A stretch of 64,000 nt of DNA from Dendrobates tinctorius (GCF_039654945.1 NW_027361831.1:1364001-1428000), one strand, 5' to 3'. Shown: positions 241 to 43,749, numbered from the stretch's first letter. Translations and numbers: made by a program. Notes: generated by a model from the letters alone, not told the origin.

Positions 241-331
241 TGTGCAGGACTCTGCTGTGCTGGTTGTCATGGTGCTGGATGAGGGGAAGTTTCTGTGTGG
301 GGTCAGGAGGGGTTTACAGGGTGGGTGTAGC

Positions 332-1640: not shown

Positions 1641-1679
1641 AGAGTGAGGGTGGTTTTCTATAAAGGGGACAGGACTACT

Positions 1680-21362: not shown

Positions 21363-21519
21363 CTAAAGAGATTAGCCTTGATATTTACAATGGGCACAAA
21401 GAGTGGTAGGCAATGGAATGGGTATGGTGGAGGCACGACGGTTTCCTCATATGGTGGATCAAAGAGAATGTGAGGGGGCATATCTAGCCTAGGGATGCAG
21501 TATCCACTGCTTGTCACAG

Positions 21520-23561
21520 AGTCCTCCATCTTTTGACACCTTTCACTCCCTCCTCAGGCCAAAAGCACAAGCCCCTATCACAGACATTTGTGCGGATGAC
21601 CTGGCCTCCCACTTTATAGAGAAAATAGATAATATCCATCAGGAAATCCGCTCCCAACCACCAAGTGTTGTGACTCCCATCCCTTCCTGCATTTCCTCTG
21701 GCTCACTTTCCACATTTGATCCCTTCACAGAAGAAGTCTCCAGACTCCTCTCTTCTTCTTGTCCGACTACATGCACTACAAACCCCATTCCCTCACATCT
21801 CTTCCAGTCTCTCTCTCCAGTCGTCACAACTCACCTAACTACAATCATTAATCTCTCCCTCTCCTTGGGCACTTTCCCATCCTCCTTCAAACACTCTATC
21901 GTTACTCCATTACTAAAGAAACCCGCTCTCGACCCATCCTGCACAAACAACTACAGACCAGTCTCCAATCTCCCCTTCATCTCTAAACTTTTGGAGCACC
22001 TAGTCTACTCCCGCCTTACCCGTTACCTCTCCACTCACTCACTCCTAGACCCTTCACAGTCTGGCTTCCGACCCCTACATTCGACTGAAACTGCGCTCAT
22101 CAAAGTGACCAATGACCTTCTGACAGCAAAATGTAACGGTGACCACTCTCTGCTCATTCTTCTTCACCTATCTGCAGTTTTCGACACTGTTGACCACTGT
22201 CTTCAGCTCTGTAGGCTCCAGTCACTAGGCATTAAGGACACCGCACTCTCCTGGTTTTCTTCCTATCTTTCTGACCGCTTCTTCAGTGTTTTGTTTGCTG
22301 GCTCCACGTCATCTCCTCTTCCTCTCGCTATCGGGGTACCTCAGGGCTCAGTCCTTGGCCCCCTTCTCTTCTTTCTCTACATGGTCCCAATTGGTCAGAC
22401 CATCAGCAGATTTGGCTTTCAGTGCCATCTTTATGCTGATAACACACAACTATACACGTCATCCCCTGACCTTAACCCCATGGTACTACAGAATGCCAGT
22501 GACTGTCTGTCCGCAGTCTCCAACATCATGTTCGCGCTCTATCTGAAACTTAACCTCTCAAAAACTGAACTTCTGCTCCAGCCGTCTACTAACCTCCCCA
22601 AATCTGACATTTCCCTCTCCGTGGTTGGCACCACAATAACAACCCGGCAGCAGGCGCGCTGTCTGGGTATTATGTTTGACACCAATCTCTCCTTAACATC
22701 CCATATACAATCTTTTGCCCGCTCTTGCCGCTTACACCTAAAGAACATTTCCAGAATCTGCACTTTTCTCACCATGGAAACAACAAAAACCCTCACATTG
22801 ATCCACTCCGGCCTGGACTACTGCAACGCTCTATTAATTTGCCTCCCCGTTACTCGACTTTCCCCTCTCCAGTCCATACTTAATGCAGCTGCCAGGGTCA
22901 TCCATCTGGCTAATCGGTACTCAGATGTGTCCGCTCTTTGCCAATCGTTACACTGGCTGCCCATTCATTATAGGATCCAATTGAAAGTACTTGTTCTCAC
23001 CCACAAAGCTCTCCAACAGTGCGACACACCCCTACATATCCTCCCTCATTTCTATCGGCATAACCGACCGCTGCGCTGTGTAAACGACTTTCAACTAACC
23101 TCTGCACTAATCCGCACCTCCCACTCCCGATTCCAAGACTTCTCCCGTGCAGCGCCAATCCTCTGGAATGCTCTACCCCAAGAAATTAGGACTATCCACA
23201 ATTTGCACAGTCTTAGGAGTTCCCTCAAAGCGCATTTGTTCAGAGCGGCCTATCACGTTCACTAATCAAAGTCATTCTATGTGTAAGTATGCATGTGTAG
23301 TGAATGGGCTATCTCCATCCATCCCTCACTCCCTCAAGATGGCTGGACCTTCCTTGTAAATACATCATTGTAAATACACACCTGTACTCTGTATCTCCCC
23401 CACCTCATTGTAGATTGTAAGCTCTCACGAGCAGGGTCGTCTTATTTTGCTTTAATTATTGTATTGTTAACGTTGTTACTTATGACTTGTGTTTTGAAAC
23501 TGTTAAACTGTAAAGCGCTGCGGAATATGTTGGCGCTATATAAATAAAGATTATTATTATT
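21520..23561 (+). mobile_element. 5'-truncated L2 (CR1/L2 group) LINE; ORF2 reverse-transcriptase part open 21511-23265
   Basis: [51 protein letters not shown] motifs; 3' gcgctgcggaatatgttggcgc stem-loop and (TTA)n tail. Confidence 0.92.
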
Positions 23562-27059: not shown

Positions 27060-28799
27060 AAATTATAATAACGTATTGTGACACCATTGGAACCATTACT
27101 GCTGCATGATTGATTATTTTTTGTGACTCATTTGTGATTTATCTTGATTCCTTTTTTTTTTTACATTGGTTTTTGCATGCATCAGCACTTTAACGATAAT
27201 AGATAATCATCTTTTTAAATTGATTTCACAATCGTGCTTTTGAAATTCTGAAATTTTGTCGGGAAAAGTGCCGGCGAGACCGGTGTAGCGGGTCGGTCTG
27301 CGAAATGTCTTCCCTTCTAATGATTCCACCATTAAATGTGAGTGGTAATACTGAACAGTAGAAATGTTTCGGAACCTCATCAAACTTAGACACAATGTCG
27401 CAGACCACTTAAAAGTCACAGAGTAGAAAAAAGTCGCCAACACTCACAAACCACCTCTGGTATTAGCTCCTGCAGAAAAACTGGAGCCTCATGACATGTT
27501 TCCATAGCCATGAATCTGGGTATGGAAACTTCCGAATGTTATCTACCTCACCCTATAGTTCCAACTAGAGTTGAGCGACTTTTGCTTTTTTAGGGTCGAG
27601 TTTCGTTTCGTGAAACCCGACTTTTCCAAAAGTCGGGTCGAGCAAAATCGTCCGATTATAGGGAAAAGTCGGGGGTCCGACTGAAACACCAAACTCAATG
27701 TAAGTCAATGGGGAATAAAAGTCGGCAGTGAGAGGAGGACAGGAAACACACCTACAGTGCCCATTTGAATGCCAAAAGCATCAATTCTTCTTACTTAAGC
27801 TGGTCAACCTTAATTTACTTCATAATACAAGTTACGCACTGAAAAATGGGGGTTATTTGGCTAAAGTTGTGGGGGGGAGGGCTGGCTCCAGGTTTTCGTG
27901 TGCCCTGGGCGAAAGAGCGCCCCTTTAACACATACCACAACTCATCATGCTCCGATACGGCAGAGAAATAGCGGTATAGTACAATGAAAAATACCTCACT
28001 TTTTACATCTCATGACAAGGTCCATCTATTTCTCCATACAGAATCATTGGTCCCATATAATGTTTGAAACAGTATATGATGAGCTCCACATAATGCTACA
28101 GTATATGTTGGTCCCCATGGATGAAGCTCCACTGTCTTATGGGCCCAAATAAAGCTCCAAACATAATGGGCCCCATTTCTAATGCTCTAGTGTATAATGG
28201 GCCCTGTAAATGCTGCTCCAGTGTCTGATGTCCACCTTTGGAATGTTCCAGTGTATGGTGGGCCCCATCTATCATTCTCCAGAGTATAGTGCTCCCCAAA
28301 AATTGCTGTCCCAACATTGAAAACAATCAAATAAGTCTCCTCGCTAGGGAATCCCTGTACTTGTCTGGACTCCTCGTCGTCCCCATCTTCCATCTCACTG
28401 CACAGTATTTCAACCTTGCAAGTGCTGTGATCCTGAGCAAGCAGGGGGGGGCCCACTCGTTGGCGACGGCACTGGCACAGGGCCCCTGATAGTACGGTGG
28501 TGTGTCTGATGGCGGGTGGGCCGAACCTGCACTTTCATCTGCAGCTTCCTCTTTGTCACCGTGTAAGATGGAACTGTATATGGGAAGGGTAACCTGAGTT
28601 TCATCAGGGTCAGATTCAGGCCGGGTAGCGTGCGAGGGGAATGTAGTGGTCTGGGTCAATGTACCAGCAGAATCATCGAGCAGTGGCTGGGCATCAGGGC
28701 ACTTGTGTCGCCCCCAGGAGTACGGTCGCCACAGTGGCATTACCTTCCTCCTAGGGAGTGTGATGTCATGCTTGGGAGCAACGAAGGATCTCTCTAGTA

Positions 28800-30869
28800 C
28801 AGTGGTCCCCAACCTTTTTTGCACCAGGGACCGGTTTCAAGCAAGACCATTCTTCCATGTCCCGGCAGGGCGGGGATGGAGGTGTGGCAGGGGCGGGGCT
28901 TTGGTCATAAGGGGGCGGGGCTATGGACACGGTTGTAGTGTAGCAGTGCATACTTATAATTAAATAACATTTATAATGTGACTCAACTCACCATAGGTTT
29001 TGAATAAGTGCTCCATCACCCCCTTCTCCCCATCATTGCCTTCACCCCATCACTCCCTTCTCCCCATCATTGCCTTCACCCCATCACTCCCTTCTCCCCA
29101 TCATTGCCTTGACCCCATCACTCCCTTCTCCCCATCATTGCCTTCACCCCATCACTCCCTTCTCCCCATCATTGCCTTCACCCCATCACTCCCTTCTCCC
29201 CATCATTGCCTTCACCCCATCACTCCCTTCTCCCCATCATTGCCTTGACCCCATCACTCCCTTCTCCCCATCATTGCCTTCACCCCATCACTGCCATCTC
29301 TCCATCATTGCCTTCACCCCATCACTCCCTTCTCCCCATCATTGCCTTCACCCCATCACTCCCTTCTCCCCATCATTGCCTTCACCCCATCACTCCCTTC
29401 TCCCCATCATTGCCTTCACCCCATCACTGCCATCTCTCCATCATTGCCTTCACCCCATCACTCCCTTCTCCCCATCATTGCCTTCACCCCATCACTCCCT
29501 TCTCCCCATCATTGCCTTCACCCCATCACTGCCATCTCTCCATCATTGCCTTCACCCCCTTCTCCCCATCATTGCCTTCACCCCATCACTCCCTTCTCCC
29601 CATCATTGCCTTCACCCCATCACTGCCATCTCTCCATCATTGCCTTCACCCCATCACTCCCTTCTCCCCATCATTGCCTTCACCCCATCACTCCCCTCTC
29701 CCCATCATTGCCTTCACCCCATCACTCCCTTCTCCCCATCATTGCCTTCACCCCATCACTCCCCTCTCCCCATCATTGCCTTCACCCCATCACTGCCATC
29801 TCTCCATCATTGCCTTCACCCCATCACTCCCTTCTCCCCATCATTGCCTTCACCCCATCACTCCCTTCTCCCCATCATTTCCTTCACCCCATCACTCCCT
29901 TCTCCCCATCATTGCCTTCACCCCATCACTGCCATCTCTCCATCATTGCCTTCACCCCATCACTCCCTTCTCCCCATCATTGCCTTCACCCCATCACTCC
30001 CTTCTCCCCATCATTGCCTTCACCCCATCACTCCCTTCTCCCCATCATTGCCTTCACCCCATCACTGCCATCTCTCCATCATTGCCTTCACCCCCTTCTC
30101 CCCATCATTGCCTTCACCCCATCACTCCCTTCTCCCCATCATTGCCTTCACCCCATCACTGCCATCTCTCCATCATTGCCTTCACCCCATCACTCCCTTC
30201 TCCCCATCATTGCCTTCACCCCATCACTCCCCTCTCCCCATCATTGCCTTCACCCCATCACTCCCTTCTCCCCATCATTGCCTTCACCCCATCACTCCCC
30301 TCTCCCCATCATTGCCTTCACCCCATCACTGCCATCTCTCCATCATTGCCTTCACCCCATCACTCCCCTCTCCCCATCACTGCCGTCTCTCCATCACTCC
30401 CCTCATGGCCTTCTCCTCATGTCCCCATCTCCTCCAGGGCCAGGCTACACAAACACAGACCAACACACACATACATACACACACACACAGACAGACATAC
30501 ACAACACACACACACACATTATGCATACACACAGACACCACCTCTCTCCTCTCACCTGCCCGCCGCCCGCGCTACCTCGCTCTGACACAGCGGCCGCGCT
30601 CCTCTCTGTGTCAGTCAGAGACAGGAAGCGCGGGCGGCGGGCAGGAAGCTGGACGCAGTGGACGGGTCCTTGCAGCTCCGCTCCTGCTATTACCTCTTGC
30701 AGGCAGCGGAGCTGCTTGGATCGCTCCCTGGCTGCCGCTAGAACTGCTGCGCGCCGCCCCAGCCCCCGCTAGGCCACTGACCGCCCCTGGCTCCCCTTGT
30801 GTCCGCGGACCGGCAAGGGCACTGCAGCGGCCCGGTGCTGGGCCGCGGACCGGCGGTTGGGGATCCCTG
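28800..30869. mobile_element. Non-autonomous hAT-Charlie (MER1-like ends) element nested in the large hAT
   Basis: CAGTGGTCCCCAACC...GGTTGGGGATCCCTG, TSD CTCTAGTA (28792-28799, 30870-30877). Confidence 0.9.
29012..30405. repeat. 34-bp minisatellite (ccttcaccccatcactcccttctccccatcattg)n
   Basis: About 40 units; accounts for the PSLPSPHH ORFs. Confidence 0.95.
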
Positions 30870-30887
30870 CTCTAGTAGGTTAACTGA

Positions 30888-31000
30888 TTGGGCGGCGTTA
30901 TTCCCACGAGTCACGACCCTCCAAACAGCGTTCATGAAGGCAAAGTGTTTGTTTTACGTGGGCATTATGGTTGCAAAGCTGAACCTTAAACGAATGTCCA

Positions 31001-31031
<31 letters not shown>

Positions 31032-31363
31032 ATAATTTGACTCATCATGGGCAACCTCAACCATCCAGCCGCAAAAAAGATGCACACATTGCACAAGCTT
31101 AATTCCGTTAACGAACGAGACTCCGTCATGCCCCGCGGTCCGAGTCCGGCTTACTAGAGGGACACGCGAGGCTCTGGCACGTGAGATTGGCCAATAACTG
31201 GTGTGTCATGCCCTTACATGTCCGTGGCTGCATGTGCGCTACACTGAAAAGGCCAGCGTTTGTCGCTTACAGGTGCAGATAACCCGCTGAAGACCGTTAG
31301 TGATGGGGATCTGGGATTACAATTATTACCCGCGAACGATGATTTCCCAGTAAGTGCAGGTCA
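30888..31363 (+). pseudogene. Diverged, internally deleted 18S rRNA segment (3' major domain region)
   Basis: Recognisable blocks ggcggcgttattccca, tatggttgcaaagctgaa, gaagggcaccaccaggagtggagcct, ttaattccg.taacgaacgagactc, atgccctta.atgtcc, gcgctacactga, ttcccagtaagtgc.ggtca, all in 18S order. Confidence 0.9.
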
Positions 31364-31388
31364 ACCGCAGTTCCGGAATTAGGCCTAA

Positions 31389-32301
31389 GGCTGAGTTCAC
31401 ACGTGGCGTTTTTTTCGCGTTTCCGCGGCGGTTTTAACTGCGCGATTTTGCCGTGAAAACGCGAAAAATAAGCATCCCATGCATTCCTATGGGATTCCGC
31501 AATGCTGTGCTAATGCTGCGGTTTTTACCGCGGCGGAATCGCTTCGGAGTAAAAAACGCAGCATGCTCATTAATTTGCTGAATTGCGGTGATCCCGCACC
31601 CATAGGAATGCATTGTTCCGCTTACTTCCCGCATGTGGCTGTGCACACCGTGCGAAAAGTAAGCAGAACATTTGCCGATGGTACCCACGGTCCGGAGGAG
31701 AGGAGACTGTCCTCCGGGCTTTGGGTACCATATCCCTGTAAAAAATAGAATTTAAAATATAAAATATTGTTATTCTTACCTTCTGACGTCCCGCGCAGCC
31801 TTCCCGCCTCTCTCCACGCTCCCGGTCCCAGTAAGCCTTTGCGAAAATGCCCGCGATGGTGTCCGTTCTCGCGGTCATTCGGGCGACGTCATCGCGAATT
31901 ACCGCGAGACATCGCGATCCCGCGAGAACGGACGTCATCGCGGGCATTTTCGCAAAGGATTACTGGGAACGGATGCGCGGGACGTCGGAAGGTGAGAATA
32001 ACACTATTTTTTATTTTTTTTACATTCTATCTTTTACTACTGATGCCGCATAGGCAGCCTCAGTAGTAAAAAGTTGGTCACACTCGTCAAACACTATGTG
32101 TAACGAGTGTGACCAACCTGTCAATCAGTTCTCCAAGCGATGCTACAGATCGCTTGGAAAACGGTAGCATTTTGCAAGCTAATTACGCTTGCAAAATGCT
32201 AGTTTTTCCGCGGGAAAATCGCGGGAATTTAAAATGCGATATTCCCGTGGAATGGAATTCCGGTAATTTCCGCGAGAGTTCCGATACGAGTGCACATAGC
32301 C
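31389..32301. mobile_element. PIF/Harbinger MITE nested in the large hAT
   Basis: TAA|GGCTGAGTTCACAC...GTGCACATAGCC|TAA; internal palindrome at 31745-32020. Confidence 0.8.
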
Positions 32302-32385
32302 TAACCGTCATTCCTGAAAAAATGAAAAACTTACGTGTACAAACCACAGGTGCTGTAGCTTGCTTAACAGCTCGCCAGCCGTTCT

Positions 32386-32802
32386 CAGGCCCAGTATGGA
32401 TTACACGTGATTGCACAAAGGTGTGAAAGGGTACCGTATCCCCGGATAACATGTATGGATAGCATAGTGTACACATTCAAAATATATGTCTATACATCAG
32501 GAGGCAGGCTCAGACGGTGTCAGGCCCAGTATGGATTACACGTGATTGCACAAAGGTGAGAAGGGGTACCGTATCCCCGGATAACATGTATGGATAGCAT
32601 AGTGTACACATTCAAAATATATGTCTATAGATCAGGAGGCAGGCTCAGACGGTGTCAGGCCCAGTATGGATTACACGTGATTGCACAAAGGTGAGAAAGG
32701 GTACCGTATCCCCGGATAACATGTATGGATAGCGTACACATTCAAAATATATGTCTATAGATCAGGAGGCAGGCTCAGACGGTGTCAGGCCCAGTATGGA
32801 TT
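32386..32802. repeat. 135-bp tandem repeat x3 inside the hAT
   Basis: caggcccagtatggatt starts at 32386, 32521, 32656 and 32786. Confidence 0.92.
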
Positions 32803-33220
32803 TGACGGCCCAGACTACACAGCGGAGGAGCAGGGAGAGGTAAAGATTGCAAATGCTGGGGCCCTGCCCAAGCAAGGGGGGCCCACTCGTGGGCGTCGGT
32901 ACTGGCACTGGGCCCCTCATAGTACGGCGGTGTGTCTGACGGTGGGTGTGCACCACCACCGTCAGAGACACTTGATTGCACTATGAGGGACCCTGTGCCA
33001 GTGCCCGCGCCCAAGAGTCGGCCTACCCACCTGTCCAGGGCAACGGCACTCGCACGGTTTCGTGCGCTAGGTGGTGACCCCAGCCATGGGGGGGAGGCAG
33101 CACAGTTAGGGAGTTTTAGAAAGTGGCATATGTTGATGTTGGACATTCAGCTGATGCAAAAGGCGAAATTGTTCAAGTCCCAGGAAGAGGAGGACCAAAG
33201 CAAGCCATTTTTCTGTCACC

Positions 33221-36200
33221 CTATGTGTCATCAGGGGAAGGTGGGACAAAATCCTTGGAAACCCATGCATGGTTCATTTTAATGAAGGTTAGATCATCCA
33301 CATTTTGGGTTGACAGACGGGTCCTTTTTTCTGTCAGGATTGATCTAGCTGCACTGAAGACTCTTTCCGATAGCACACTTGCAGCTGGGCAAGCGAGCTC
33401 CTGTAAGGCATATTGTGCCAATTCAGGCCAGGTGTCCAGTTTAGCGTCCCAATAGTCAAAGGGGAATGACCTGTGCGGCAGAACATCGATATGGGAGGAA
33501 AAGTAGTTTGTAACCATAGTTGACAACTGCTGTCTCCTGTCACTTTCCATCGATGCCGTATTACCAGTTGTGTGAGCGGTACTTGAAAAATCAGTCCACA
33601 ACATTGTCATGAAACCCCTGTCTCCAACGCCACTTCTGCTCTGTGCACCACGAACACCTCTGCCAAGCTGTCCCCGGCCCGTATGGCTCGTGTGAGAACC
33701 ATCACCGTTGCTGTGTGCTGGGAATGCCTCAACCAACCTGTTTACCAGAGTTGCTTGTTTATTAGCCAATATTAGGTCAAGGTTCTCGTGTGGCATGATG
33801 TTTTGTAATTTGCCTTTATAGCGTGGATCCAGGATGCTGGCCAACCAGTAGTCGTCATCGTTCATCATTTTGGCAATGCGGGGGTCCCTTTTTAGGATCT
33901 GCAAGGCATAATCTGACATGTGGGCCAATGTTCCCGGTGTCAATGATGCACTGCGAGTGCTGGTTGGAGGAGCACTTTCTGGCAAATCCACATCCCTCCA
34001 GTCACGCACAAACCCTGTACCAGACCTTGCCACGACAACATTTTCACGTGCCCCACGAGATGCATCCTCCTCCCCTAAGTAATCATCCCCATCATCATCC
34101 TCCTCCTCCTCTTCTTCCTCCACCTCGTCCAGGAGAGGTCCCTGAGCAGACAATGGCTGAATGTCATCAAGGATTCCCTCCTCCTCTTCCTCCTCGTCAA
34201 CATTGGCAGCAGACGCCTGCTCCTTAAGGTGCGTCAAAGTTTGCATGAGCAGACGCATAAGTGGGATGCTCATGCTTAGGATTGCGTCGTCTGCGCTTAC
34301 CAGCCGTGTGCATTCCTCAACACACTGAAGGACTTTACAGAGGTCTTTCAGCTTCGACCACTGCACACCTGTCAACTCCATGTCTGCTCTCAAAGTGCCT
34401 GGCTGTGTATCCTCCCACAAATGCATTATGGCCTGCCTCTGTTCGCACAGCCGCTCAACCATGTGCAGGGTGGAGTTCCACCTTGTTGCAATGTCGATAA
34501 TGAGGCGGTGGTTGGGAAGGTTGAGCAACCGCTGCAGCTTCTGCATACGAATGGAGTGTACAGGCGACCGGCGGATGTGCGCGCACAGTCTTCGCACCTT
34601 CTGGAGCAGGGCTGTTAACTCCGGATAATTGTTGAGGAAGCACTGCACCACCAGGTTCAAGGTGTGAGCCAAGCAAGGTATGTGGCTGAGTTTTGAAAAG
34701 GCTATGGCTGCCACAAAATTACGGCCGTTATCACTAACTACCTTGCCTGCCTCAAGATGTATACTGCCCAGCCATGACTCAGTTTGTCGCTGAAAGTACT
34801 CGGCCAGCACCTCCGCGGTGTGTCTGTCGCCCAAACACATCATCTGCATCACAGCCTGCTGACGCTTTCCACTAGCTGCTCGATAGGGGGACACCTCGTG
34901 TGCAACAGTGGCAGCTGCAGATGGAGTGCTCGTACGACTGCGCTCTGTGGACAAGCTTTCGCTTCTGGAGGAGGAGGAGGAGGAGGGTCAAACGCCTACA
35001 GCCAACTGTTTCCTATACCGTGGGCTAGGCAGCACTGTCCCACCACCGCTGTCCCCTGTGGACCCTGCATCCACCACATTAACCCAGTGCGCAGTGATGG
35101 ACACGTAACGGCCCTGGCCATGCCGACTGGACCATGCATCTGTTGTGAGGTGCACCTTTCCACTCACTGACTGCTTGAGTGCATGGACAATGCGGTCTTT
35201 CACATGATGGTGGAGGGCTGGGATGGCTTTGCGAGAGAAGAAGTGGCGACTGGGTAGGTCATAGCGTGGTACTGCATAGGCCATGAGTTCGCGGAAAGCT
35301 GTGCTTTCCACCAACCGATAGGGCATCATCTCGAGATTAGTTTGGCAATGTGGGCGTTCAAACCCAGTGTACGCGGATGAGAGACTGAGTACTTTCTTGA
35401 CCTACTCATAGTCTCTGGGAGGGTGAAGTGGACTTGAGAGCTGCATATGGTGGAACTAGCGGTGGACAGGGCGGACTGAGAGAGGGTTGATGATGGTGAT
35501 GGAGTTGGTGTTCTTTCTGATGGCCTAGATTCAGTCTTTCGTTGATATAACAGTGGGATTCCCTGACTGCTTTGGCCTTGCAACGACACCTCAACATTTG
35601 CTGCTGTGCTAACCAGTGGGCTTACAGTGGGGGAAACAATGTAGCGTTGCTGACTACCTTCTTTGTGATCAGTTGCACATGTGGTACTTGAGGTTTGGTG
35701 TTGTGTCCACGCTTGCAAGCGCATGCTGGTTAAATGTCTAAGCATGCAACTGGTATTCAAATTTTTCAGATTTTTCCCTCGGCTAAAGGTCTTTGCGCAC
35801 TTCTTACAGATAACCTTGGCCTGATCATGAGGATTTTGTTCAAAAAAGTGCCACACTGCACTCTTCCTACTTTGGAAGACATTTTGCAGCCTAGCACGCT
35901 GTGCTATTTTGACCGTGTGGACAAGCTGTCCAGCAACTCTTTTGATTTTTGGAACCTGTCTTTGGAGTGCTCCGGGCCTGCCAGATAACAGCTGTTGCGA
36001 TGTCGATGTCTGCTGTGGATGCTCCTCCTCCTCATCTGAGCTATTGGAAGCAGCACCCTCTTCCCCCAATGGATGCCAATCTGGGTCAACAACTGGGTCA
36101 TCCATCACCTCCTCTTCAATGTCATGTGCACCTTCCTCTGTGTCACCGTGTATGGTGGTATAGTATGCGGGAAGGGGCACCTGAGTCTCATCAGGGTCAG

Positions 36201-36762
36201 AATCTGGCCCATTACACTGCGACGACAAGGTAGTGCTCTGACTGAATGTACCAGCAGAATCATATATCAGTGGCTGTGCATTAGTGCACTCCATGTCAGA
36301 TTCATCTTGGCCTGGGTAATTCACCATTTCACTTGATAACCCAGGCATGGTATGTGAAAACAGCTCCATGGAGTAATCAGTTGTATGGCCTGCGTCATCC
36401 TTCAATCTTGGTTGGGGTGAAGGACACAAGGAAAGGTGTGGTTCATGAACATGACCCTCCAATGACGACTCAGTGCTTTTATTTTTTACAACTTCAGAAG
36501 AGGAGGCGATAGAGCTGGAGGCTGAGTCAGCGATGTAAGCCAAAACTTTTTCCTGATGCTCTGGCTTTAAAAGCGGTTTGCCAACTCCTAGAAAACTAAG
36601 CCTTCGAGGCCTTGTGGAGCCAGACGATGATGCGGGCTCAACACCTCCTGCATTCGGTCCTATTTTGCTTTTGCCAGTACCATCAGATCCACCACCAACA
36701 CCATCATTACCAGCTGGCAACCCCCGCCCAATTCCACGACCTCTTCCACCAGCCTTCCTCAT
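33221..36762 (-). pseudogene. hAT transposase (BED zinc finger, DDE, hATC dimerisation domain), ~1180 codons, one frameshift (~35332) and one in-frame TGA (34988-34990)
   Basis: SAVWHFF..CKKC..MLRH (BED); LTTDAW, VSDNG, CLAH, TRWNST, LDPRYK, SVLSERVFS motifs. Confidence 0.93.
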
Positions 36763-36828
36763 TTTTGGTAAAAATGTACACAAAATCCCACAAACTATTA
36801 TGTAATGTAAAACAAGGTACAAGGTGTA

Positions 36829-37592
36829 TATAGGACAGGGGAGATGTAGAATTTCTGAACACACTTGTGGACACTGTTGGATTGTGTGAAGCCCAGTTAA
36901 TATCACACCGCTATGTCACAGGCTCAATGTCGCAGGTGTGAAAAATGTCACTATAGGACAGGGGAGATGTAGAATTTCTGAACACACTTGTGGACACTGT
37001 TGGATTGTGTGAGGCCCAGTTAATATCACACTGCTATGTCACAGGCTCAATGTCGCAGGTGTGAAAAATGTCACTATACGACAGGGGAGATGTAGAATTT
37101 CTGAACACACTTGTGGACACTGTTGTGTGAGGCCCAGTTAATATCACACCGCTATGTCACAGGCTCAATGTCACAGGAGTGAAAAATGTTACTATAGGAC
37201 AGGGGAGATGTAGAATTTCTGAACACACTTGTGGACACTGTTGTGTGAGGCCCAGTTAATATCACACCGCTATGTCACAGGCTCAATGTCGCAGGTGTGA
37301 AAAATGTCACTATACGACAGGGGAGATGTAGAATTTCTGAACACTCTTGTGGACACTGTTGTGTGAAGCCCAGTTAATATCACACCGCTATGTCACAGGC
37401 TCAATGTCGCAGGTGTGAAAAATGTCACTATAGGACAGGGGAGATGTAGAATTTCTGAACACACTTGTGGACACTGTTGGATTGTGTGAGGCCCAGTTAA
37501 TATCACACCGCTATGTCACAGGCTCAATGTCGCAGGTGTGAAAAATGTCACTATAGGACAGGGGAGATGTAGAATTTCTGAACACACTTGTG
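36829..37592. repeat. 118/123-bp tandem array, left part
   Basis: About 6 copies of taggacaggggagatgtagaatttctgaacacacttgtgg...; continues at 41036. Confidence 0.95.
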
Positions 37593-37846
37593 TATTCAAA
37601 ACTAAAGGAACAAAAAAGCGCAATAGGGTCTTATCTGGGTTATTTCTGGAGAAATAGATTAGAATTTACTCACCCTTTTTAGGAGAGATTCAGGCATGCG
37701 GAATCAGTAATCTGCTTGCTGCATGTCCAAAGGTCAGCTCTGTGACCACTTGAAACACCAGATTTCGGAATAAATTCTTGGACTTTAGTGCGCTGCCAGA
37801 TAAAAGTCACTAATCCAGTTTAAGAGAAGGTTTAATCCATTTTATT

Positions 37847-37889
37847 TCCCAACGCGTTTCGAAATGTGTACCATTTCTTCCTCAGGGGA
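37847..37889 (-). ncRNA. Hammerhead ribozyme in the inverted pLTR
   Basis: Reverse complement of 40904-40946. Confidence 0.8.
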
Positions 37890-38823
37890 TGACGTATATG
37901 ATCAAACAGAGCTGTCACAGATTATATACAGCAAGAATTCAAAAAACGGCGCCAAAGGATCACATGTCATCTGGTGCAAATGTCAGGGTTCAAAGTGTCA
38001 CAGATAAGATGATGCATTAGTTGATCTAAATTCATTAAAAACATATTATTTTTATTATCTCATAGATAAAAAAGGAAGAGAAGAAAAGAAAAGAAGGAAG
38101 AAGATAGAAAACGAAAAATGGAATAAATATAAAACAAGGGAAATATAGAAACGAACTCATGACATCTAGGAATAAAAATAGCATACTGGGTGTCTTGGAC
38201 CACTATACCAAACCCAGGTCATACCTGACAAGAAAAAAGAAAGGAAGAAAAGGACTTAAAAATGATTAAAAAAGATGATTAAAAAAATATATATATATAA
38301 AAGAACTACTTAATTAAAATGTATAATTTATATGACAATAAAGGAAACTTTCTTTTTTTATTAAAAAATGTTTGTATGAATCACCATGAATATGGCCAAT
38401 TAAAAAATGTGGCCGAAAAAATCAATCAGTACGATCGATTATAAAGAATTCACACACCATTTTAAAAAAGGGAAGGTATTAATTCCATTCAAAAATCATC
38501 AGAGTGTTTGATGGGAAATACACAGAGACACCGACTACGGAGAGCTCAAACAGCGCCCAAATGAAGAGACCAGGATCGCTTCCACCGACAGAAAGTGAGG
38601 AAATAAAGAAGGAAATAGGGGGAGACCGATCATCTATAATATAATAAAACAAAACTGACATCTTTTTCTTATACCACTATAATATAAAATAAAATTATAT
38701 AAAAGAGATGTGCACATTAAAAAAGTATAAAGAAAAAATAAATAATTCAGCCACATTACAGGGATAAAAAGTCGCATACAGAAAAGGGGTTAAACATACA
38801 GAATACAGCAGAAATCAATAAAA

Positions 38824-39912
38824 ATGACATATGATAGTCACGTTGACAATTTCATCCATGATATTAATAATAATAACTGGGGTCTATCATTCTCCTCAGT
38901 ATATGAACAGAATAGTATCAACTTTTTAGATATAACCGTTTTTATTAAGGACAATACCATTTTAACTAAAACCTTTTTTAAAAATGTTGATATTAATAGT
39001 TATATTCCTTTTAATAGCGGACATTTTGGAAAATGGCTAAGGAATATTCCAGAGAATCAGTTTAGGAGGATCAGAAAAAACTGTTCTAGCATTGAGGATT
39101 TTAAGGACCAAGCTGATATATTAAAAAATAGGTTTGTGGATAAAAAATACCCTAATAATTTAATCAAAAGTGCCTATAATAGGTGTGTCAATATGTCACA
39201 AGACACTCTCATTAATGAACAAAAAATAGCTAAACCTGATAATAAAAAATTTCTGACAAATTTTATTACCCAACATTGTGCTGAACATACAAGAATACGC
39301 AAAATTCTATGTAATAATTGGTATATACTTTTAAGTGATCCTATTCTACAGAAATTTTTACCTAGCAATCCAGGAATAACTTTTAGAAGGGCACCAACTA
39401 TCAAGGGATTGGTTGCCCCGAGTCGACTAAAAACTGAATCGACATCGAATCCAATTCATGCCCCTTTAAGAGGGATTTATAAATGTGGAAAGAGAAATTG
39501 TCTCTGTTGTAATATTATTACACACAGAGAAAAAACTGTAAAATCATCTACCACCAATGAAATCTTTCCTATAAAAAATTATTTGAACTGCACCACGGAA
39601 TTTGTTATATATTTAATCGAATGTAGTTGCAAAAAACAGTATGTTGGAAGAACAACCCAACCCTTACACTCAAGGGTTAATTCACATAGATATAACATTA
39701 AGAAGGGTTTCTTACAACATGGTCTTTCTAGACATTTCGCTATTAAACATAATAAGGATCCGAGTGGTTTAAAAATCAGTCCAATTGAACATATTCCTTT
39801 TGACATTCCCGATAGAATAGGGCAATTAAATATAAAAGAAGTCTTTTGGATTTACAGGTTGAATACACTTAAGCCATATGGATTGAACGAAATTACAGAG
39901 GTTTTTCTTTAA
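38824..39912 (+). CDS. Penelope ORF C-terminus: RT thumb, Cys-rich linker and GIY-YIG endonuclease
   Basis: INFLDITV, CGKRNCLCC, LNCTTEFVIYLIECSCKKQYVGRT, EVFWIYRLNTLKPYGLN. Confidence 0.88.
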   Translation: MTYDSHVDNFIHDINNNNWGLSFSSVYEQNSINFLDITVFIKDNTILTKTFFKNVDINSYIPFNSGHFGKWLRNIPENQFRRIRKNCSSIEDFKDQADILKNRFVDKKYPNNLIKSAYNRCVNMSQDTLINEQKIAKPDNKKFLTNFITQHCAEHTRIRKILCNNWYILLSDPILQKFLPSNPGITFRRAPTIKGLVAPSRLKTESTSNPIHAPLRGIYKCGKRNCLCCNIITHREKTVKSSTTNEIFPIKNYLNCTTEFVIYLIECSCKKQYVGRTTQPLHSRVNSHRYNIKKGFLQHGLSRHFAIKHNKDPSGLKISPIEHIPFDIPDRIGQLNIKEVFWIYRLNTLKPYGLNEITEVFL

Positions 39913-40903
39913 AATTGGATAATTTTAATAATTCTCTTTTTTAATAATTTCCAATTATGTACTCATATGTCATTTTTATTGATTTCTGCTGTATTCTGTA
40001 TGTTTAACCCCTTTTCTGTATGCGACTTTTTATCCCTGTAATGTAGCTGAATTATTTATTTTTTCTTTATACTTTTTTAATGTGCACATCTCTTTTATAG
40101 AATTTTATTTTATATTATAGTGGTATAAGAAAAAGATGTCAGTTTTGTTGTATTATAGATGATCGGTCTCCCCCTATTTCCTCCCTTTGTGTCGGGACAT
40201 CGGTGGAAGCGATCCTGGTCTCTTCATTTGGGCGCTGTTTGAGCTCTCCGTAGTCGGTGTCTCTGTGTATTTCCCATCAAACACTCTGATGAATTTTGAA
40301 TGGAATTAATACCTTCCCTTTTTTAAAATGGTGTGTGAATTCTTTATAATCGATCGTACTGATTGATTTTTTTTGGCCACATTTTTTAATTGGCCATATT
40401 CATGGTGATTCATACAAACATTTTTTAATAAAAAAAGAAAGTTTCCTTTATTGTCATATAAATTATACATTTTAATTAAGTAGTTCTTTTATATATATAT
40501 ATATATTTTTTTAATCATCTTTTTTAATCATTTTTAAGTCCTTTTCTTCCTTTCTTTTTTCTTGTCAGGTATGACCTGGGTTTGGTATAGTGGTCCAAGA
40601 CACCCAGTATGCTATTTTTATTCCTAGATGTCATGAGTTCGTTTCTATATTTCCCTTGTTTTATATTTATTCCATTTTTCGTTTTCTATCTTCTTCCTTC
40701 TTTTCTTTTCTTCTCTTCCTTTTTTATCTATGAGATAATAAAAATAATATGTTTTTAATGAATTTAGATCAACTAATGCATCAGCTTATCTGTGACACTT
40801 TGAACCCTGACATTTGCACCAGATGACATGTGATCCTTTGGCGCCGTTTTTTGAATTCTTGCTGTATATAATCTGTGACAGCTCTGTTTGATCATATATG
40901 TCA

Positions 40904-40946
40904 TCCCCTGAGGAAGAAATGGTACACATTTCGAAACGCGTTGGGA
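40904..40946 (+). ncRNA. Minimal type I hammerhead ribozyme in the 3' pLTR
   Basis: tccc-CTGAGGA-a-gaaatg gtaca catttc-GAAA-cgcgtt-ggga. Confidence 0.82.
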
Positions 40947-41035
40947 AATAAAATGGATTAAACCTTCTCTTAAACTGGATTAGTGACTTTTATCTGGCAG
41001 CGCACTAAAGTCCAAGAATTTATTCCGAAATCTGG

Positions 41036-41703
41036 TGAACACACTTGTGGACACTGTTGTGTGAGGCCCAGTTAATATCACACCGCTATGTCACAGGCTC
41101 AATGTCGCAGGTGTGAAAAATGTCACTATAGGACAGGGGAGATTTAGAATTTCTGAACACACTTGTGGACACTGCTGTGTGAGGCCCAGTTAATATCACA
41201 CCGCTATGTCACAGGCTCAATGTCGTAGGTGTGAAAAATGTCACTATAGGACAGGGGAGATGTAGAATTTCTGAACACACTTGTGGACACTGTTGGATTG
41301 TGTGAGGCCCAGATAATATCACACCGCTATGTCACAGGCTCAATGTCGCAGGTGTGAAAAATGTCACTATACGACAGGGGAGATGTAGAATTTCTGAACA
41401 CACTTGTGGACACTGTTGGATTGTGTGAGGCCCAGTTAATATCACACCGCTATGTCACAGGCTCAATGTCGCAGGTGTGAAAAATGTCACTATAAGACAG
41501 TGGAGATGTAGAATTTCTGAACACACTTGTGGACACTGTTGTGTGAGGCCCAGTTAATATCACACCGCTATGTCACAGGCTCAATGTCGTTGGTGTGAAA
41601 AATGTCACTATAGGACAGGGGAGATGTAGAATTTCTGAACACACTTGTGGACACTGTTTGATTGTGTGAGGCCCAGTTAATATCACACCGCTATGTCACA
41701 GGC
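41036..41703. repeat. 118/123-bp tandem array, right part
   Basis: About 5.5 further copies. Confidence 0.95.
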
Positions 41704-41771
41704 AGAAATTGGCTAGTGTATGACAAACTACAAGGTGTATATAGAATTGGGCAGAATAGGAATCTCCCTAG

Positions 41772-42935
41772 AGTGTAGGTCTGTAAGAACGGAGCATGTC
41801 CTCGACTTATCCTTACAGAGTGACACACAGATAGCTTCACTGTGGCCGTGATAACAACCATTACACGGTACTGAGAGAGGAGCGTGCACGTACACCGCTG
41901 TCTGGTGTCCGTAAAATTGTCAAGCTCCGTGTTTTTTAAGTATACGGACTGACACAGGCTGTCTCTCTATAGTTTTGAATGTGATCAAACAGCAAATATA
42001 CTTAACTGTTTGAAAAGCAGACAAAACTAGAAGGTGTAGGTCTGTAAGAACGGAACATGTCCTCGACTTATTCTTACAGAGTGACACACAGATAGCTTTG
42101 CTGTGGCCGTGATAACAGCCGTTACACAGTACTGAGAGAGGAGCGTGCACGTACACCGCTGTCCGGTGTCCGTAAAATTGTCAAGCTCCGTGTTTTTTAA
42201 GTATACGGACTGACACACGCTGTCTCTCTATAGTTTTGAATGTGATCAAACAGCAAATATACTTAACTGTTTGAAAAGCAGACAAAACTAGAAGGTGTAG
42301 GTCTGTAAGAATGGAACATGTCCTCGACTTATTCTTACAGAGTGACACACAGATAGCTTCGCTGTGGCCGTGATAACAGCCGTTACACGGTACTGAGAGA
42401 GGAGCGTGCACGTACACCGCTGTCCGGTGTCCGTAAAATTGTCAAGCTCCGTGTTTTTTAAGTATACGGACTGACACACGCTGTCTCTCTATAGTTTTGA
42501 ATGTGATCAAACAGCAAATATACTTAACTGTTTGAAAAGCAGACAAAACTAGAAGGTGTAGGTCTGTAAGAACGGAACATGTCCTCGACTTATTCTTACA
42601 GAGTGACACACAGATAGCTTCGCTGTGGCCGTGATAACAGCCGTTACACGGTACTGAGAGAGGAGCGTGCACGTACACCGCTGTCCGGTGTCCGTAAAAT
42701 TGTCAAGCTCCGTGTTTTTTAAGTATACGGACTGACACACGCTGTCTCTCTATAGTTTTGAATGTGATCAAACAGCAAATATACTTAACTGTTTGAAAAG
42801 CAGACAAAACTAGAAGGTGTAGGTCTGTAAGAACGGAACATGTCCTCGACTTATTCTTACAGAGTGACACACAGATAGCTTCACTGTGGCCGTGATAACA
42901 GCCGTTACACGGTACTGTGTGAGGAGCGTACACCG
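41772..42935. repeat. 261-bp tandem repeat x~4.5, each unit made of four stem-loops
   Basis: Period 261 (ORF track repeats at 41920, 42181, 42442, 42703); inverted repeats visible in each unit. Confidence 0.93.
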
Positions 42936-43749
42936 CTGTATGGTGTGGAAAAATGCATGCTCAGTACCTCACCAGGACAAAAAAAAATTTGGATTGCTTT
43001 TAAAAAAGCAGTTTGCAGAGCAGTGGGAAAACAGCAATGCAGCTATCAGGAAGCCTTATAAGGCAGCCTAACAACCAACACAGCTGATCCAGCAAAATAT
43101 AGCCTCCACTTGCACTGCACACACAGTGACTGGTGTGTTGTACAGGCAAAATCGCTAGTAGCAGAAGCAGTTTTTGGTGTCTTCTTCCCTGCCTAACGCT
43201 CTCCCTACAGAATCAGCAGCAGCAGCAGCTCTCCCTATTCTGAGATCAGCATGAGTAACATGGCGGTCGGCGTGCACGCCCTTTTATACCCCCTGTGACG
43301 CCCCCTAAAGCAAGCCAATCACTTGCATGCCCTTCTCAAAGATGGTGGTGACCCTTGTCTATGTCATCACGTTGCCCACAGTGTCCGTGGATCCTGATTG
43401 GCTGAAAAAGGGCGGAAAACAAACTTTTGAAACGCGACTTTGGCGCTAAAGTCGCCGAGCTTGTGGCCGACCTCACCCTAGGGTCGAGTTTCGTTTCATG
43501 AAACCCGACTTTACCAAAAGTCAGCGACTTTTGAAATTTTTCGACCCGTTTCGCTCAACTCTAGTTCCAACTATACTGTTGGTGGAGGAGGGAAAATGTT
43601 TTGGAGATGGTTTTCTGGGATTAGCAGAAGTCTCTAAGCTCCGCTGAAAAGAAATCTGAAGTATATTTCTAGCATTGACGCACAGCAGAAACAAGCTTTA
43701 AAAAAAAACTCCTCTTAGTGAGTTGTGCACTTTTTATTCCAGCGGTCTT

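What the first reader, a model, noticed from the sequence alone, without database searches (positions are those of the whole stretch)
27566..43563. 16-kb hAT transposon loaded with structured non-coding cargo around its transposase
Seen: TIRs and a perfect 8-bp TSD delimit one element. Removing the clearly nested insertions (Penelope, Charlie MITE, Harbinger MITE) leaves ~9.5 kb, of which only 3.5 kb is transposase. Upstream of the ATG are a 261-bp four-hairpin array and a 118/123-bp array. Downstream of the stop are a 134-nt hairpin, a 135-bp array, an 18S rRNA-derived segment and a duplicated ORF piece. Known: typical hAT elements are a few kb with short subterminal repeats. Inference: this may be a DNA-transposon lineage with a built-in structured-RNA layer (small-RNA source, silencing decoy or translation control).
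Basis: partly seen in the sequence, partly recalled or inferred. Interest (0 to 1): 0.8.

Follow-up and report, generated by a model that had tools for sequence, protein, structure and literature searches.

The report
Frog hAT transposon carrying repeat arrays
This is a broken copy of a very abundant poison-frog "cut-and-paste" (hAT) jumping gene whose long non-coding parts are inherited repeat arrays, scrambled self-copies, a captured 18S rRNA fragment and three later insertions; this is a known way for transposons to grow, and nothing here shows a structured-RNA system.

Summary
A 13-bp TIR and a perfect 8-bp TSD (GTTCCAAC) delimit a 15,998-bp hAT element. Three nested insertions, each with its own TSD, account for 6,426 bp. 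The backbone is 9,572 bp, of which 3.5 kb is a BED/hAT transposase gene on the minus strand. All listed modules exist. The transposase is broken by one frameshift and one in-frame stop.

The structured-RNA reading is not supported. Only the 261-bp unit and the 3' hairpin fold better than shuffles, and the 261-bp unit, the one tested on both strands, folds equally well on each (DNA palindromes). The 118/123-bp and 135-bp arrays do not fold better than shuffles. Covariation is untestable because the units are 98-99% alike. No run on record as RNA holds the element.

Contigs from three frog species labels show that the two upstream arrays and their junctions are family-wide, whereas the Penelope interior draws few contigs. 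The ATG-proximal 1.4-kb array has 0 sense ATG against 45 antisense (P about 0.02 per unit), which fits a start-codon-free leader.

This scan has noted the same module set on other DNA of this genome (s1-381462, s1-386056) and similar hAT layouts elsewhere (s1-382824, s1-362235).

Verdict: a new member of a known kind, of low to moderate interest.

The parts
27558..27565 (.). Target-site duplication GTTCCAAC, left copy. Right copy at 43564-43571.
   Evidence: Fits the hAT target consensus nTnnnnAn (own knowledge).
27566..27578 (+). Left TIR TAGAGTTGAGCGA. This is the 3' end of the element relative to the transposase.
   Evidence: 13/13 match with the right end.
27576..27725 (.). Left subterminal cluster of AAAGTCG/CGACTTT motifs, the likely transposase-binding repeats.
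   Evidence: 5 copies here and 4 at the other end. Elsewhere in the element they occur only inside the Penelope (2 copies).
28412..28703 (-). Diverged second copy of a hairpin arm (like 32847-32951, 84%) joined directly to an N-terminal ORF piece (like 36114-36290, 78%). It looks like the junction of a Ds-like internal deletion derivative.
28800..30869 (.). Nested hAT-type MITE with TIRs CAGTGGTCCCCAACC and CAGGGATCCCCAACC and an 8-bp TSD CTCTAGTA. It carries the 34-bp x41 C-rich minisatellite (29011-30401), an (AC)n run and a GC-rich hairpin (30555-30645).
30960..31396 (+). Diverged 18S rRNA-derived fragment (model positions 1118-1666, with deletions), antisense to the transposase.
   Evidence: 86-94 bits, E = 1e-23 to 1e-24.
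31389..32301 (.). Nested PIF/Harbinger-type MITE with a TAA TSD. A palindromic MITE lies inside it at about 31737-32030, and a related copy sits at 59260-59523.
32376..32802 (.). 135-bp x3.1 tandem array, 96% alike. It does not fold better than shuffles.
32847..33059 (.). Long hairpin formed by an inverted duplication. It starts 165 nt downstream of the stop codon.
   Evidence: z = -9.6. The miRNA-model hits fall on both strands and are all below threshold.
33221..36762 (-). hAT transposase pseudogene of about 1,178 codons. It has a 300-aa N-terminal extension, a BED zinc finger, the catalytic region and the hAT dimerisation domain. It is broken by a frameshift near 35329-35340 and an in-frame stop at 34988-34990.
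36829..37592 (-). ATG-proximal part of the 118/123-bp array. It has no ATG on the sense strand.
   Evidence: contigs.
37593..41035 (+). Nested 5'-truncated Penelope-like element. It has 1.08-kb inverted arms (97-98% alike), an HTH + GIY-YIG ORF at 38824-39912, and a 14-bp TSD at 37579-37592 and 41036-41049.
   Evidence: Few contigs lie on its interior.
41036..41703 (-). Distal part of the same 118/123-bp array.
41773..42933 (-). 261-bp x4.4 array, 98-99% alike. Each unit has four palindromic stem-loops and one sense ATG that opens an 18-codon uORF.
   Evidence: contigs.
42934..43550 (-). 5' unique region with a promoter-like CCAAT (43401-43397), an inverted CCAAT (43319-43315), TATAAAAG (43288-43281), and a subterminal AAAGTCG cluster (43435-43531).
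   Evidence: These are read from the sequence; promoter function is inferred.
43551..43563 (-). Right TIR, at the 5' end of the element.

Best explanation
This is a dead copy of an abundant, formerly autonomous hAT (Ac/ZBED-like) DNA transposon family of dendrobatid frogs. A 9.6-kb backbone has been inflated to 16 kb by three later nested TE insertions. It moved as one unit by hAT cut-and-paste, and today it could move only with transposase supplied in trans.

The non-coding bulk is ordinary transposon baggage.
1. Two upstream minisatellite arrays arose in place by slippage or unequal exchange. Their ends grade into degenerate partial units of the flanking unique sequence. They are inherited by the whole family.
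2. The downstream region is a patchwork typical of aberrant gap repair or template switching in cut-and-paste elements. It holds an inverted duplication (the hairpin), a small array, a captured 18S rRNA fragment and a Ds-like deletion junction.

The arrays lie between a TATA/CCAAT promoter-like region at the 5' end and the ATG, so they would form a leader of about 3 kb. That placement is inferred. The ATG-proximal 1.6 kb of this leader is kept free of AUG. The distal 261-bp array contributes one short uORF per unit.

The hairpins are DNA-level palindromes. Nothing shows that they act as RNA.
For: hAT identity:
- 13-bp TIR beginning TAGAG, an 8-bp TSD, a BED finger and the hAT dimerisation domain.
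- The closest proteins come from Dendrobates tinctorius (92%) and Ranitomeya (59-80%). They read straight through both places where this copy is broken.

Nested elements: each has its own TSD.

Family-wide upstream modules:
- 10,074 contigs of organism A, 4,131 of B and 1,038 of C lie on the laid stretch.
- 57-92 (A), 6-59 (B) and 12-33 (C) distinct contigs cover informative sites in the ORF start and both arrays. Sites inside the Penelope interior draw 1-14, 0-9 and 0.
- Contigs bridge the leader-to-array boundary (X15 record 10; X17 records 21, 22).
- An X15 loose end reproduces the 261-array-to-5'-region junction, 28 of 30 letters.
- This copy differs from the majority letter at 36677, 36739, 41437 and 42361.

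In-place origin of the arrays: partial degenerate units at both array edges.

No RNA-specific structure.

AUG-free array: 0 sense against 45 antisense ATG in 1,432 nt. Shuffles of the consensus unit give a mean of 2.8 ATG, P(0) = 0.017. All 8 uATGs of the hypothetical 3,039-nt leader lie in its first 1,462 nt.

Self-derived downstream pieces.

Background: tandem arrays are common in this window. Five more lie outside the element.

Literature: TE-borne tandem arrays are documented in frogs and elsewhere (PMC12628747, PMC4079207, PMC12054243). hAT makes up 3.9% of the D. tinctorius assembly (PMC11152451).
Against: - Sharing of the downstream modules (hairpin, 135-bp array, 18S piece, deletion junction) among copies was not tested here. 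It rests only on unchecked notes from other windows.
- The promoter, the start site and the extent of the transcript are inferred from sequence alone.
- The runs guessed to be RNA (X15, X17) may be DNA, so transcription of the arrays is not shown.
- The AUG-free signal comes from one repeat unit and one test (P about 0.02).
- The 261-bp unit does fold far better than chance, and its palindromes are kept across units. A function for them, as DNA or as RNA, is not excluded.
- No canonical poly(A) signal lies on the sense strand of the backbone downstream of the stop.
Confidence: 0.7

Rival explanations
1. The palindromic 261-bp units and the 3' hairpin are transcribed and act as RNA. They could be hairpin-derived small-RNA precursors, a silencing decoy, or structured leader/UTR elements that control transposase translation.
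For: - The 261-bp unit (z = -4.5) and the 3' hairpin (z = -9.6) fold far better than shuffles.
- Both lie inside the presumed transcription unit.
- The 261 array is family-wide and present in three species labels.
- One stem pair in one unit changes on both sides.
Against: - The 261-bp unit folds equally well on both strands, as DNA palindromes do.
- Two of the four arrays show no excess structure.
- The covariation score is matched by 115 of 500 shuffles, and two stem pairs are broken without compensation.
- No Rfam family reaches its threshold.
- No holder run is on record as RNA.
Confidence: 0.1
2. The upstream arrays act as DNA. They could be repeated promoter or enhancer monomers, as in the tandem monomers of the mouse L1 5' UTR. 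They could instead be extra transposase- or host-factor-binding sites, with a proximal promoter just upstream of the ATG.
For: - The arrays sit directly upstream of the ATG.
- The last degenerate unit reads CCTATATAC about 70 nt before the ATG.
- The arrays are conserved in position across species while the unit sequence diverges (loose ends).
- The 261-bp palindromes would suit dimeric DNA-binding proteins.
Against: - The subterminal AAAGTCG motif is absent from the arrays.
- A better TATA/CCAAT region lies at the 5' end of the element, upstream of the arrays.
- The strong strand bias in ATG content (0 against 45) is expected for a transcribed leader and not for an enhancer.
- There are no functional data.
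Confidence: 0.12
3. The upstream arrays sit in a 5' UTR intron (donor near 42972, acceptor near 36797). On this view they are tolerated junk that is spliced out of the message.
For: A GT donor-like site CCTG|GTGAGG at 42972/42971 and a pyrimidine-rich AG acceptor-like site at about 36797 flank the arrays.
Against: - Contigs from the two runs guessed to be RNA run straight through the putative acceptor into the array (X15 record 10; X17 records 21, 22).
- No joint or loose end was reported at 36796/7 among the rows shown.
- An intron would not explain the absence of sense ATG in the 118/123 array.
Confidence: 0.05
4. The downstream 2.7 kb is private to this copy or to a small subfamily. It would be a one-off chimera made by template switching during gap repair, or by joint (macro)transposition of an autonomous element and a deletion derivative with captured DNA between them.
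For: - The junction at 28412-28703 looks like a Ds-type internal deletion.
- It is only 78-84% like its counterparts in the same element, as if it came from a diverged relative.
- The 18S piece is foreign DNA.
Against: - No internal TIR or subterminal motif cluster marks a second element.
- Notes from two other windows of this genome describe hAT copies with antisense 18S-derived cargo, one of them with the same hairpin and 'chimeric second ORF'. These notes were not checked by me.
Confidence: 0.15

Closest known systems
Autonomous hAT elements (Ac, hobo, Hermes, Tol2) and the ZBED1/4/6-like transposase clade
   Same: 8-bp TSD that fits nTnnnnAn. Short TIR beginning YARNG. Subterminal short-motif clusters. 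BED finger plus C-terminal hAT dimerisation domain. Cut-and-paste movement as one unit.
   Different: The backbone is 9.6 kb, against about 3-5 kb. The protein has a 300-aa N-terminal extension. There are 3.4 kb of arrays and unique sequence between the 5' end and the ATG, and 2.7 kb of patchwork after the stop.
Transposons that carry tandem arrays or seed satellites: Tetris (PMC4079207), Xenopus Xstir and miDNA4 MITEs (reviewed in PMC12628747), Helentron-borne arrays (PMC7492417), FEDoR of Rana temporaria (PMC12054243)
   Same: Homogeneous internal tandem arrays are inherited with the element. They vary in copy number and are spread through the genome by transposition.
   Different: Those cases are mostly non-autonomous or foldback elements. 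Here the arrays flank an (ex-)autonomous transposase gene, and one of them shows a start-codon-free strand bias.
Mouse L1 5' UTR monomers (own knowledge)
   Same: Tandem units of about 100-260 bp lie directly upstream of the element's ORF and are conserved as a family feature. This is a 'works like' candidate only.
   Different: That is a different TE class (LINE). Promoter activity of the frog units is untested.
Ds-type deletion derivatives, filler DNA and gene-fragment capture by cut-and-paste elements through abortive gap repair (own knowledge)
   Same: An internal deletion junction, an inverted duplication and a captured host fragment (18S) sit inside the element.
   Different: Here the rearranged pieces sit behind a full-length transposase gene instead of replacing it.

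Membership tests
hAT superfamily DNA transposon | 8-bp target-site duplication | tested here: met
   GTTCCAAC on both sides.
hAT superfamily DNA transposon | Short terminal inverted repeats, consensus start YARNG | tested here: met
   13/13 TIR TAGAGTTGAGCGA. The consensus is from own knowledge.
hAT superfamily DNA transposon | Transposase with the C-terminal hAT dimerisation domain | tested here: met
   PF05699, E = 2e-11, 44 bits against a cut-off of 21.4.
hAT superfamily DNA transposon | BED zinc finger DNA-binding domain | tested here: met
   PF02892, E = 1e-10.
hAT superfamily DNA transposon | RNase-H-like DDE catalytic core | tested here: inconclusive
   No Pfam hit in the local Pfam copy. 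The region is 67-80% identical to Ranitomeya proteins that carry PF27039. Catalytic residues were not mapped.
hAT superfamily DNA transposon | Intact ORF (autonomy) | tested here: not met
   One frameshift and one in-frame stop, judged against continuous homologues. This copy is non-functional.
Penelope-like element (nested insert 37593-41035) | GIY-YIG endonuclease C-terminal to the reverse transcriptase | tested here: inconclusive
   No Pfam hit. The nearest Atlas clusters carry PF26215 HTH_animal and PF01541 GIY-YIG (score 0.96). The motif ...QYVGRT...R...H is seen by eye. The RT part is absent because the copy is 5'-truncated.
PIF/Harbinger-type MITE (nested insert 31389-32301) | TWA 3-bp TSD and TIRs | tested here: met
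   TAA on both sides. The TIRs match imperfectly, 9 of 12. This is weak evidence, because a 3-bp match arises by chance 1 time in 64.
Curated structured RNA family (Rfam) | Match at or above a family's gathering score | tested here: not met
   Only SSU_rRNA_eukarya passes, for the 18S-like piece. The hairpin hits to miRNA models score 30-44 bits against thresholds of 52-150, and they fall on both strands.
Conserved structured RNA (generic) | Strand-specific folding excess and compensatory substitutions | tested here: not met
   The 261-bp unit gives z = -4.5 on both strands. The other arrays give z of about 0 or above. Covariation is not above the shuffles, but the test has very low power because the units are 98-99% alike.

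The most novel reading that the evidence does not exclude
Dendrobatid hAT families have evolved a conserved, modular non-coding architecture that regulates the element itself. The parts would be a start-codon-free repeat leader of variable length, a uORF-bearing palindrome array, a 3' long hairpin and an antisense 18S fragment. For example, they could tune transposase translation, or feed hairpin or antisense-rRNA-tagged transcripts into the small-RNA machinery. Array copy number would then act as a heritable dial of activity.
Probability: 0.1. Interest if true: 0.6.

Novelty: new member of a known kind. Interest (0 to 1): 0.3.

Why it matters
Poison-frog genomes are 6-12 Gb and largely made of TEs. 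hAT elements make up about 4% of the D. tinctorius assembly (PMC11152451), but their anatomy has not been described. This copy documents three things:
- Cut-and-paste elements can reach 10-16 kb through inherited internal arrays, self-rearrangement, host-fragment capture and nesting.
- Such elements spread satellite-like arrays through the genome.
- One array carries a simple sequence signature (no sense AUG over 1.4 kb) that can be tested as a leader constraint.

It also warns that hairpin-rich repeat units folding equally well on both strands should not be read as RNA elements without transcript data.

Tried and rejected
- Fetching other copies. The look-up of encoding contigs on four close homologues (P0002, P0004, P0005, P0006) returned gene ranges but no DNA, because the frog assembly files are too large. 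Word searches with short N- and C-terminal pieces found no close relative on a short, readable contig: only large NCBI frog assemblies, plus two distant 54-57% ENA fragments under 1 kb that I did not fetch. No multi-copy consensus or cross-species covariation could therefore be made.
- 5' UTR intron idea. Candidate donor and acceptor sites exist, but contigs cross the acceptor unspliced. The two sites are 6.2 kb apart, beyond the 6,000-letter limit, so a joint could not be tested directly.
- A second, internal element end at 28975-28989. This is a 15-nt partial match to the TIR that lacks the terminal TA, and I judge it a chance match.
- Hairpin arm as a derivative of the N-terminal coding sequence. 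The Ranitomeya N-termini do not contain it.
- Covariation within the 261-bp array. It is uninformative.
- Look-ups of the 261-bp unit and the 18S piece by sequence in the scan's notes were blank. The operators state that such blanks mean nothing.
- Contig depth was not used as a copy number, as the tool advises. Only contig counts and positions were used.
The broken transposase was searched piece by piece only.

Full report

Yes. The left end reads TAGAGTTGAGCGA (27566-27578). The right end is its exact reverse complement (43551-43563). Both are flanked by GTTCCAAC. A perfect 8-bp duplication next to a 13/13 TIR is far beyond chance. From my own knowledge, it also fits the hAT target pattern nTnnnnAn and the hAT TIR start YARNG. 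AAAGTCG/CGACTTT motifs cluster in the first 160 nt (5 copies) and the last 130 nt (4 copies). Elsewhere in the element they occur only inside a nested insert. These are classic subterminal repeats.

**2. The coding part**

The transposase lies on the minus strand, from the ATG at 36762 to the stop at 33221-33223.

- Pfam finds a BED zinc finger (E = 1e-10) and the hAT C-terminal dimerisation domain (E = 2e-11).
- The reading frame is broken twice. There is a frameshift after ...AHIAKLI near 35329-35340, and an in-frame stop at 34988-34990.
- Ranitomeya homologues read continuously through both places. These are therefore lesions, not introns, and this copy is a pseudogene.
- The closest proteins are from Dendrobates tinctorius (92%) and Ranitomeya (59-80%), annotated as 'ZBED4/6-like'.
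- The unusual 300-aa N-terminal extension is conserved in Ranitomeya.
- The window is therefore most likely from the dyeing poison frog or a close relative.

**3. Nested insertions**

Three insertions, each with its own target duplication, account for 6,426 bp.

a) A 5'-truncated Penelope-like element, 37593-41035.
- It has a 14-bp TSD, visible as a 14-nt duplication in one array unit.
- It has 1.08-kb inverted arms.
- Its ORF has nearest Atlas clusters that carry HTH_animal and GIY-YIG domains.

b) A 2,070-bp hAT-type MITE, 28800-30869.
- It has a perfect TSD, CTCTAGTA.
- It holds the 34-bp x41 minisatellite.

c) A 913-bp PIF/Harbinger-type MITE, 31389-32301.
- It has a TAA TSD.
- A palindromic MITE is nested in it, and a relative of that MITE sits at 59260-59523.

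**4. The non-coding modules**

All the modules exist at the stated places.

Upstream of the ATG, in sense orientation:
- a 5' unique region with CCAAT, inverted CCAAT and TATAAAAG (43401-43281);
- the 261-bp x4.4 array;
- a 69-nt spacer;
- the 118/123-bp array. It has about 12 units and is a mix of two length variants that differ by a 5-nt indel.

Downstream of the stop:
- a hairpin of about 200 nt;
- the 135-bp x3.1 array;
- the antisense 18S-like fragment (Rfam 86-94 bits);
- a 292-bp segment in which a copy of one hairpin arm (84%) abuts a copy of an N-terminal ORF piece (78%).

In the main body those last two pieces lie 3.2 kb apart. The segment therefore looks like the junction of a Ds-type internal deletion derivative.

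Both upstream arrays end in degenerate partial units that grade into the unique flanks. This points to an origin in place.

**5. Are the modules 'structured'?**

Only partly, and not in an RNA-specific way.

- The 261-bp unit folds well on the sense strand (-84.6 kcal/mol, z = -4.46) and equally well on the antisense strand (-87.4 kcal/mol, z = -4.54). That is the signature of DNA palindromes.
- The 3' hairpin has z = -9.6, folded on the sense strand only. It is an inverted duplication. It hits miRNA models on both strands and far below their thresholds.
- The 118/123-bp and 135-bp arrays fold no better than dinucleotide shuffles. This holds for single units and for multi-unit stretches on either strand (z -0.93 to +2.64).
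- Among the four full 261-bp units, 77 of 84 stem pairs never vary, one changes on both sides and two are broken. 115 of 500 shuffles reach the observed covariation. The test has no power either way.

**6. Are the modules private or shared?**

I could not fetch other copies as sequence. Instead I laid Logan contigs of four runs on 36550-42549. The runs were chosen:
- X1, organism A, DNA;
- X6, organism B;
- X15, organism A, guessed to be RNA;
- X17, organism C, guessed to be RNA.

Following the tool's caution, I use where contigs lie and how many distinct contigs there are, not depth.

| Place | Region | Distinct contigs with the majority letter (X1 / X6 / X15 / X17) |
|---|---|---|
| 36677 | ORF start | 68 / 55 / 1 / 33 |
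| 36739 | ORF start | 92 / 59 / 1 / 16 |
| 41437 | 123-bp array | 57 / 6 / 5 / 12 |
| 42361 | 261-bp array | 69 / 45 / 5 / 21 |

- This copy departs from that majority letter at all four places.
- Sites inside the Penelope interior have 1-14 contigs in X1, 0-9 in X6 and none in X17.
- Contigs bridge the boundary between the 66-nt pre-ATG segment and the array (X15 record 10, 36618-36873; X17 records 21 and 22).
- An X15 contig leaves a 261-bp unit into letters that match the array-to-5'-region junction of this copy at 28 of 30 positions.
- Loose ends in X1, X6 and X17 show diverged versions of the 118-bp unit at the same position.

The two upstream arrays and their order are therefore family features shared by at least three species labels. 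The Penelope interior, by contrast, draws few contigs, as expected of a later insertion present in few copies.

The downstream modules were outside the single 6-kb call allowed. Their sharing is suggested only by this scan's notes on other windows: s1-381462 (hairpin, antisense 18S, chimeric second ORF) and s1-386056. I could not check those notes.

**7. Transcription**

It is not shown.
- No holder run is on record as RNA.
- X15 and X17 are only guessed to be RNA.
- If they are RNA, the array is contiguous with the ORF in transcripts. That argues against my own intron hypothesis (donor about 42972, acceptor about 36797).
- No canonical poly(A) signal lies on the sense strand of the backbone after the stop.

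**8. A possible functional signature**

- The 118/123-bp array has 0 ATG on the sense strand and 45 on the antisense strand in 1,432 nt.
- Dinucleotide shuffles of the consensus unit carry 2.8 ATG on average, and only 1.7% have none.
- In a hypothetical 3,039-nt leader from the TATA box to the ATG, with the Penelope removed, all 8 uATGs lie in the first 1,462 nt. Four of the eight open the same 18-codon uORF, in successive 261-bp units. The last 1,577 nt are AUG-free.

This fits a transcribed leader kept compatible with scanning. It is one unit and one test, so the evidence is suggestive only.

**9. What it is and how it works**

Best reading (0.7): this is a dead copy of an abundant dendrobatid hAT family.
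- Shown: hAT identity, nesting, pseudogene state, family-wide upstream arrays, and the lack of RNA-specific structure.
- Inferred: array birth by slippage or unequal exchange, the downstream patchwork by aberrant gap repair or template switching with capture of an rRNA fragment, the promoter at the 5' end, and the arrays as a leader.

Rivals:

| Rival | Confidence |
|---|---|
| RNA hairpin / small-RNA layer | 0.10 |
| DNA-level promoter, enhancer or binding monomers | 0.12 |
| Intron housing | 0.05 |
| Private chimeric origin of the downstream part (overlaps with the main reading) | 0.15 |

**10. Comparison with what is known**

Tandem arrays carried by transposons are well documented:
- Tetris (PMC4079207);
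- Xenopus Xstir and miDNA4, reviewed in PMC12628747;
- Helentron-borne arrays (PMC7492417);
- the dispersed repeat-rich FEDoR element of Rana temporaria, with a short hAT-like flank (PMC12054243).

The D. tinctorius genome paper reports hAT at 3.91% of the assembly and 265,361 fragments, but it does not describe their anatomy (PMC11152451).

This window also has five other minisatellites outside the element, so arrays are common background here.

The element passes the hAT membership tests apart from ORF intactness. The DDE core was not mapped.

I class it as a new member of a known kind. The same family and similar layouts were already noted by this scan on other DNA of this genome.

**11. 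Score**

Interest is 0.3. The anatomy is confirmed and tidy, and the AUG-free array is a neat testable detail. The headline idea of a structured-RNA layer is not supported, and the general phenomenon is known.

Noticed in passing
window 36550-36749: The first 200 nt or so of the transposase ORF draw the most contigs of any part laid, in three species labels. The count exceeds that of the arrays. This suggests very abundant deletion derivatives that keep the 5' arrays plus the ORF start. The depth figures are not copy numbers.
   Followed up: partly
window 37593-41035: The nested Penelope-like copy has an odd shape. A 163-nt unique head is followed by two 1.08-kb arms, 97-98% alike and in inverted orientation, around a 1.1-kb core that encodes only the HTH + GIY-YIG tail. 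It is very AT-rich (26-32% GC), and few contigs match its interior.
   Followed up: partly
window 59260-59523 and 31737-32030: Two copies (73-89% alike) of a palindromic MITE of about 260-290 bp whose arms contain ...TTATTCTNACCTTC... One is nested inside the Harbinger-type MITE and the other is free-standing.
   Followed up: partly
window 5867-6428 and 55596-56027: 84-bp periodic repeats inside minus-strand ORFs (5829-6782 and 55592-56356). They look like tandem C2H2 zinc-finger units. No family scan was run on them.
   Followed up: no
window 329-1641, 9754-10132, 11433-12589, 58510-59166: Further homogeneous minisatellites (30-bp x44, 55-bp x7, 26/52-bp x18-38, 31-bp x21) lie outside the hAT. 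Tandem arrays are common background in this region.
   Followed up: no
window 21511-23265 (+): A 584-aa ORF upstream of the element. It was not examined.
   Followed up: no
window 27566-33220, sense (minus) strand: No AATAAA or ATTAAA lies on the transposase sense strand in the 2.66-kb backbone after the stop. The only hit is inside a nested MITE at 32010.
   Followed up: partly
window 28069-28303: Degenerate repeats of about 30 bp (TGGGCCCCAT...CTCCAGTGTAT..TG) in the 3' terminal region of the hAT. They may be a further subterminal repeat set.
   Followed up: no
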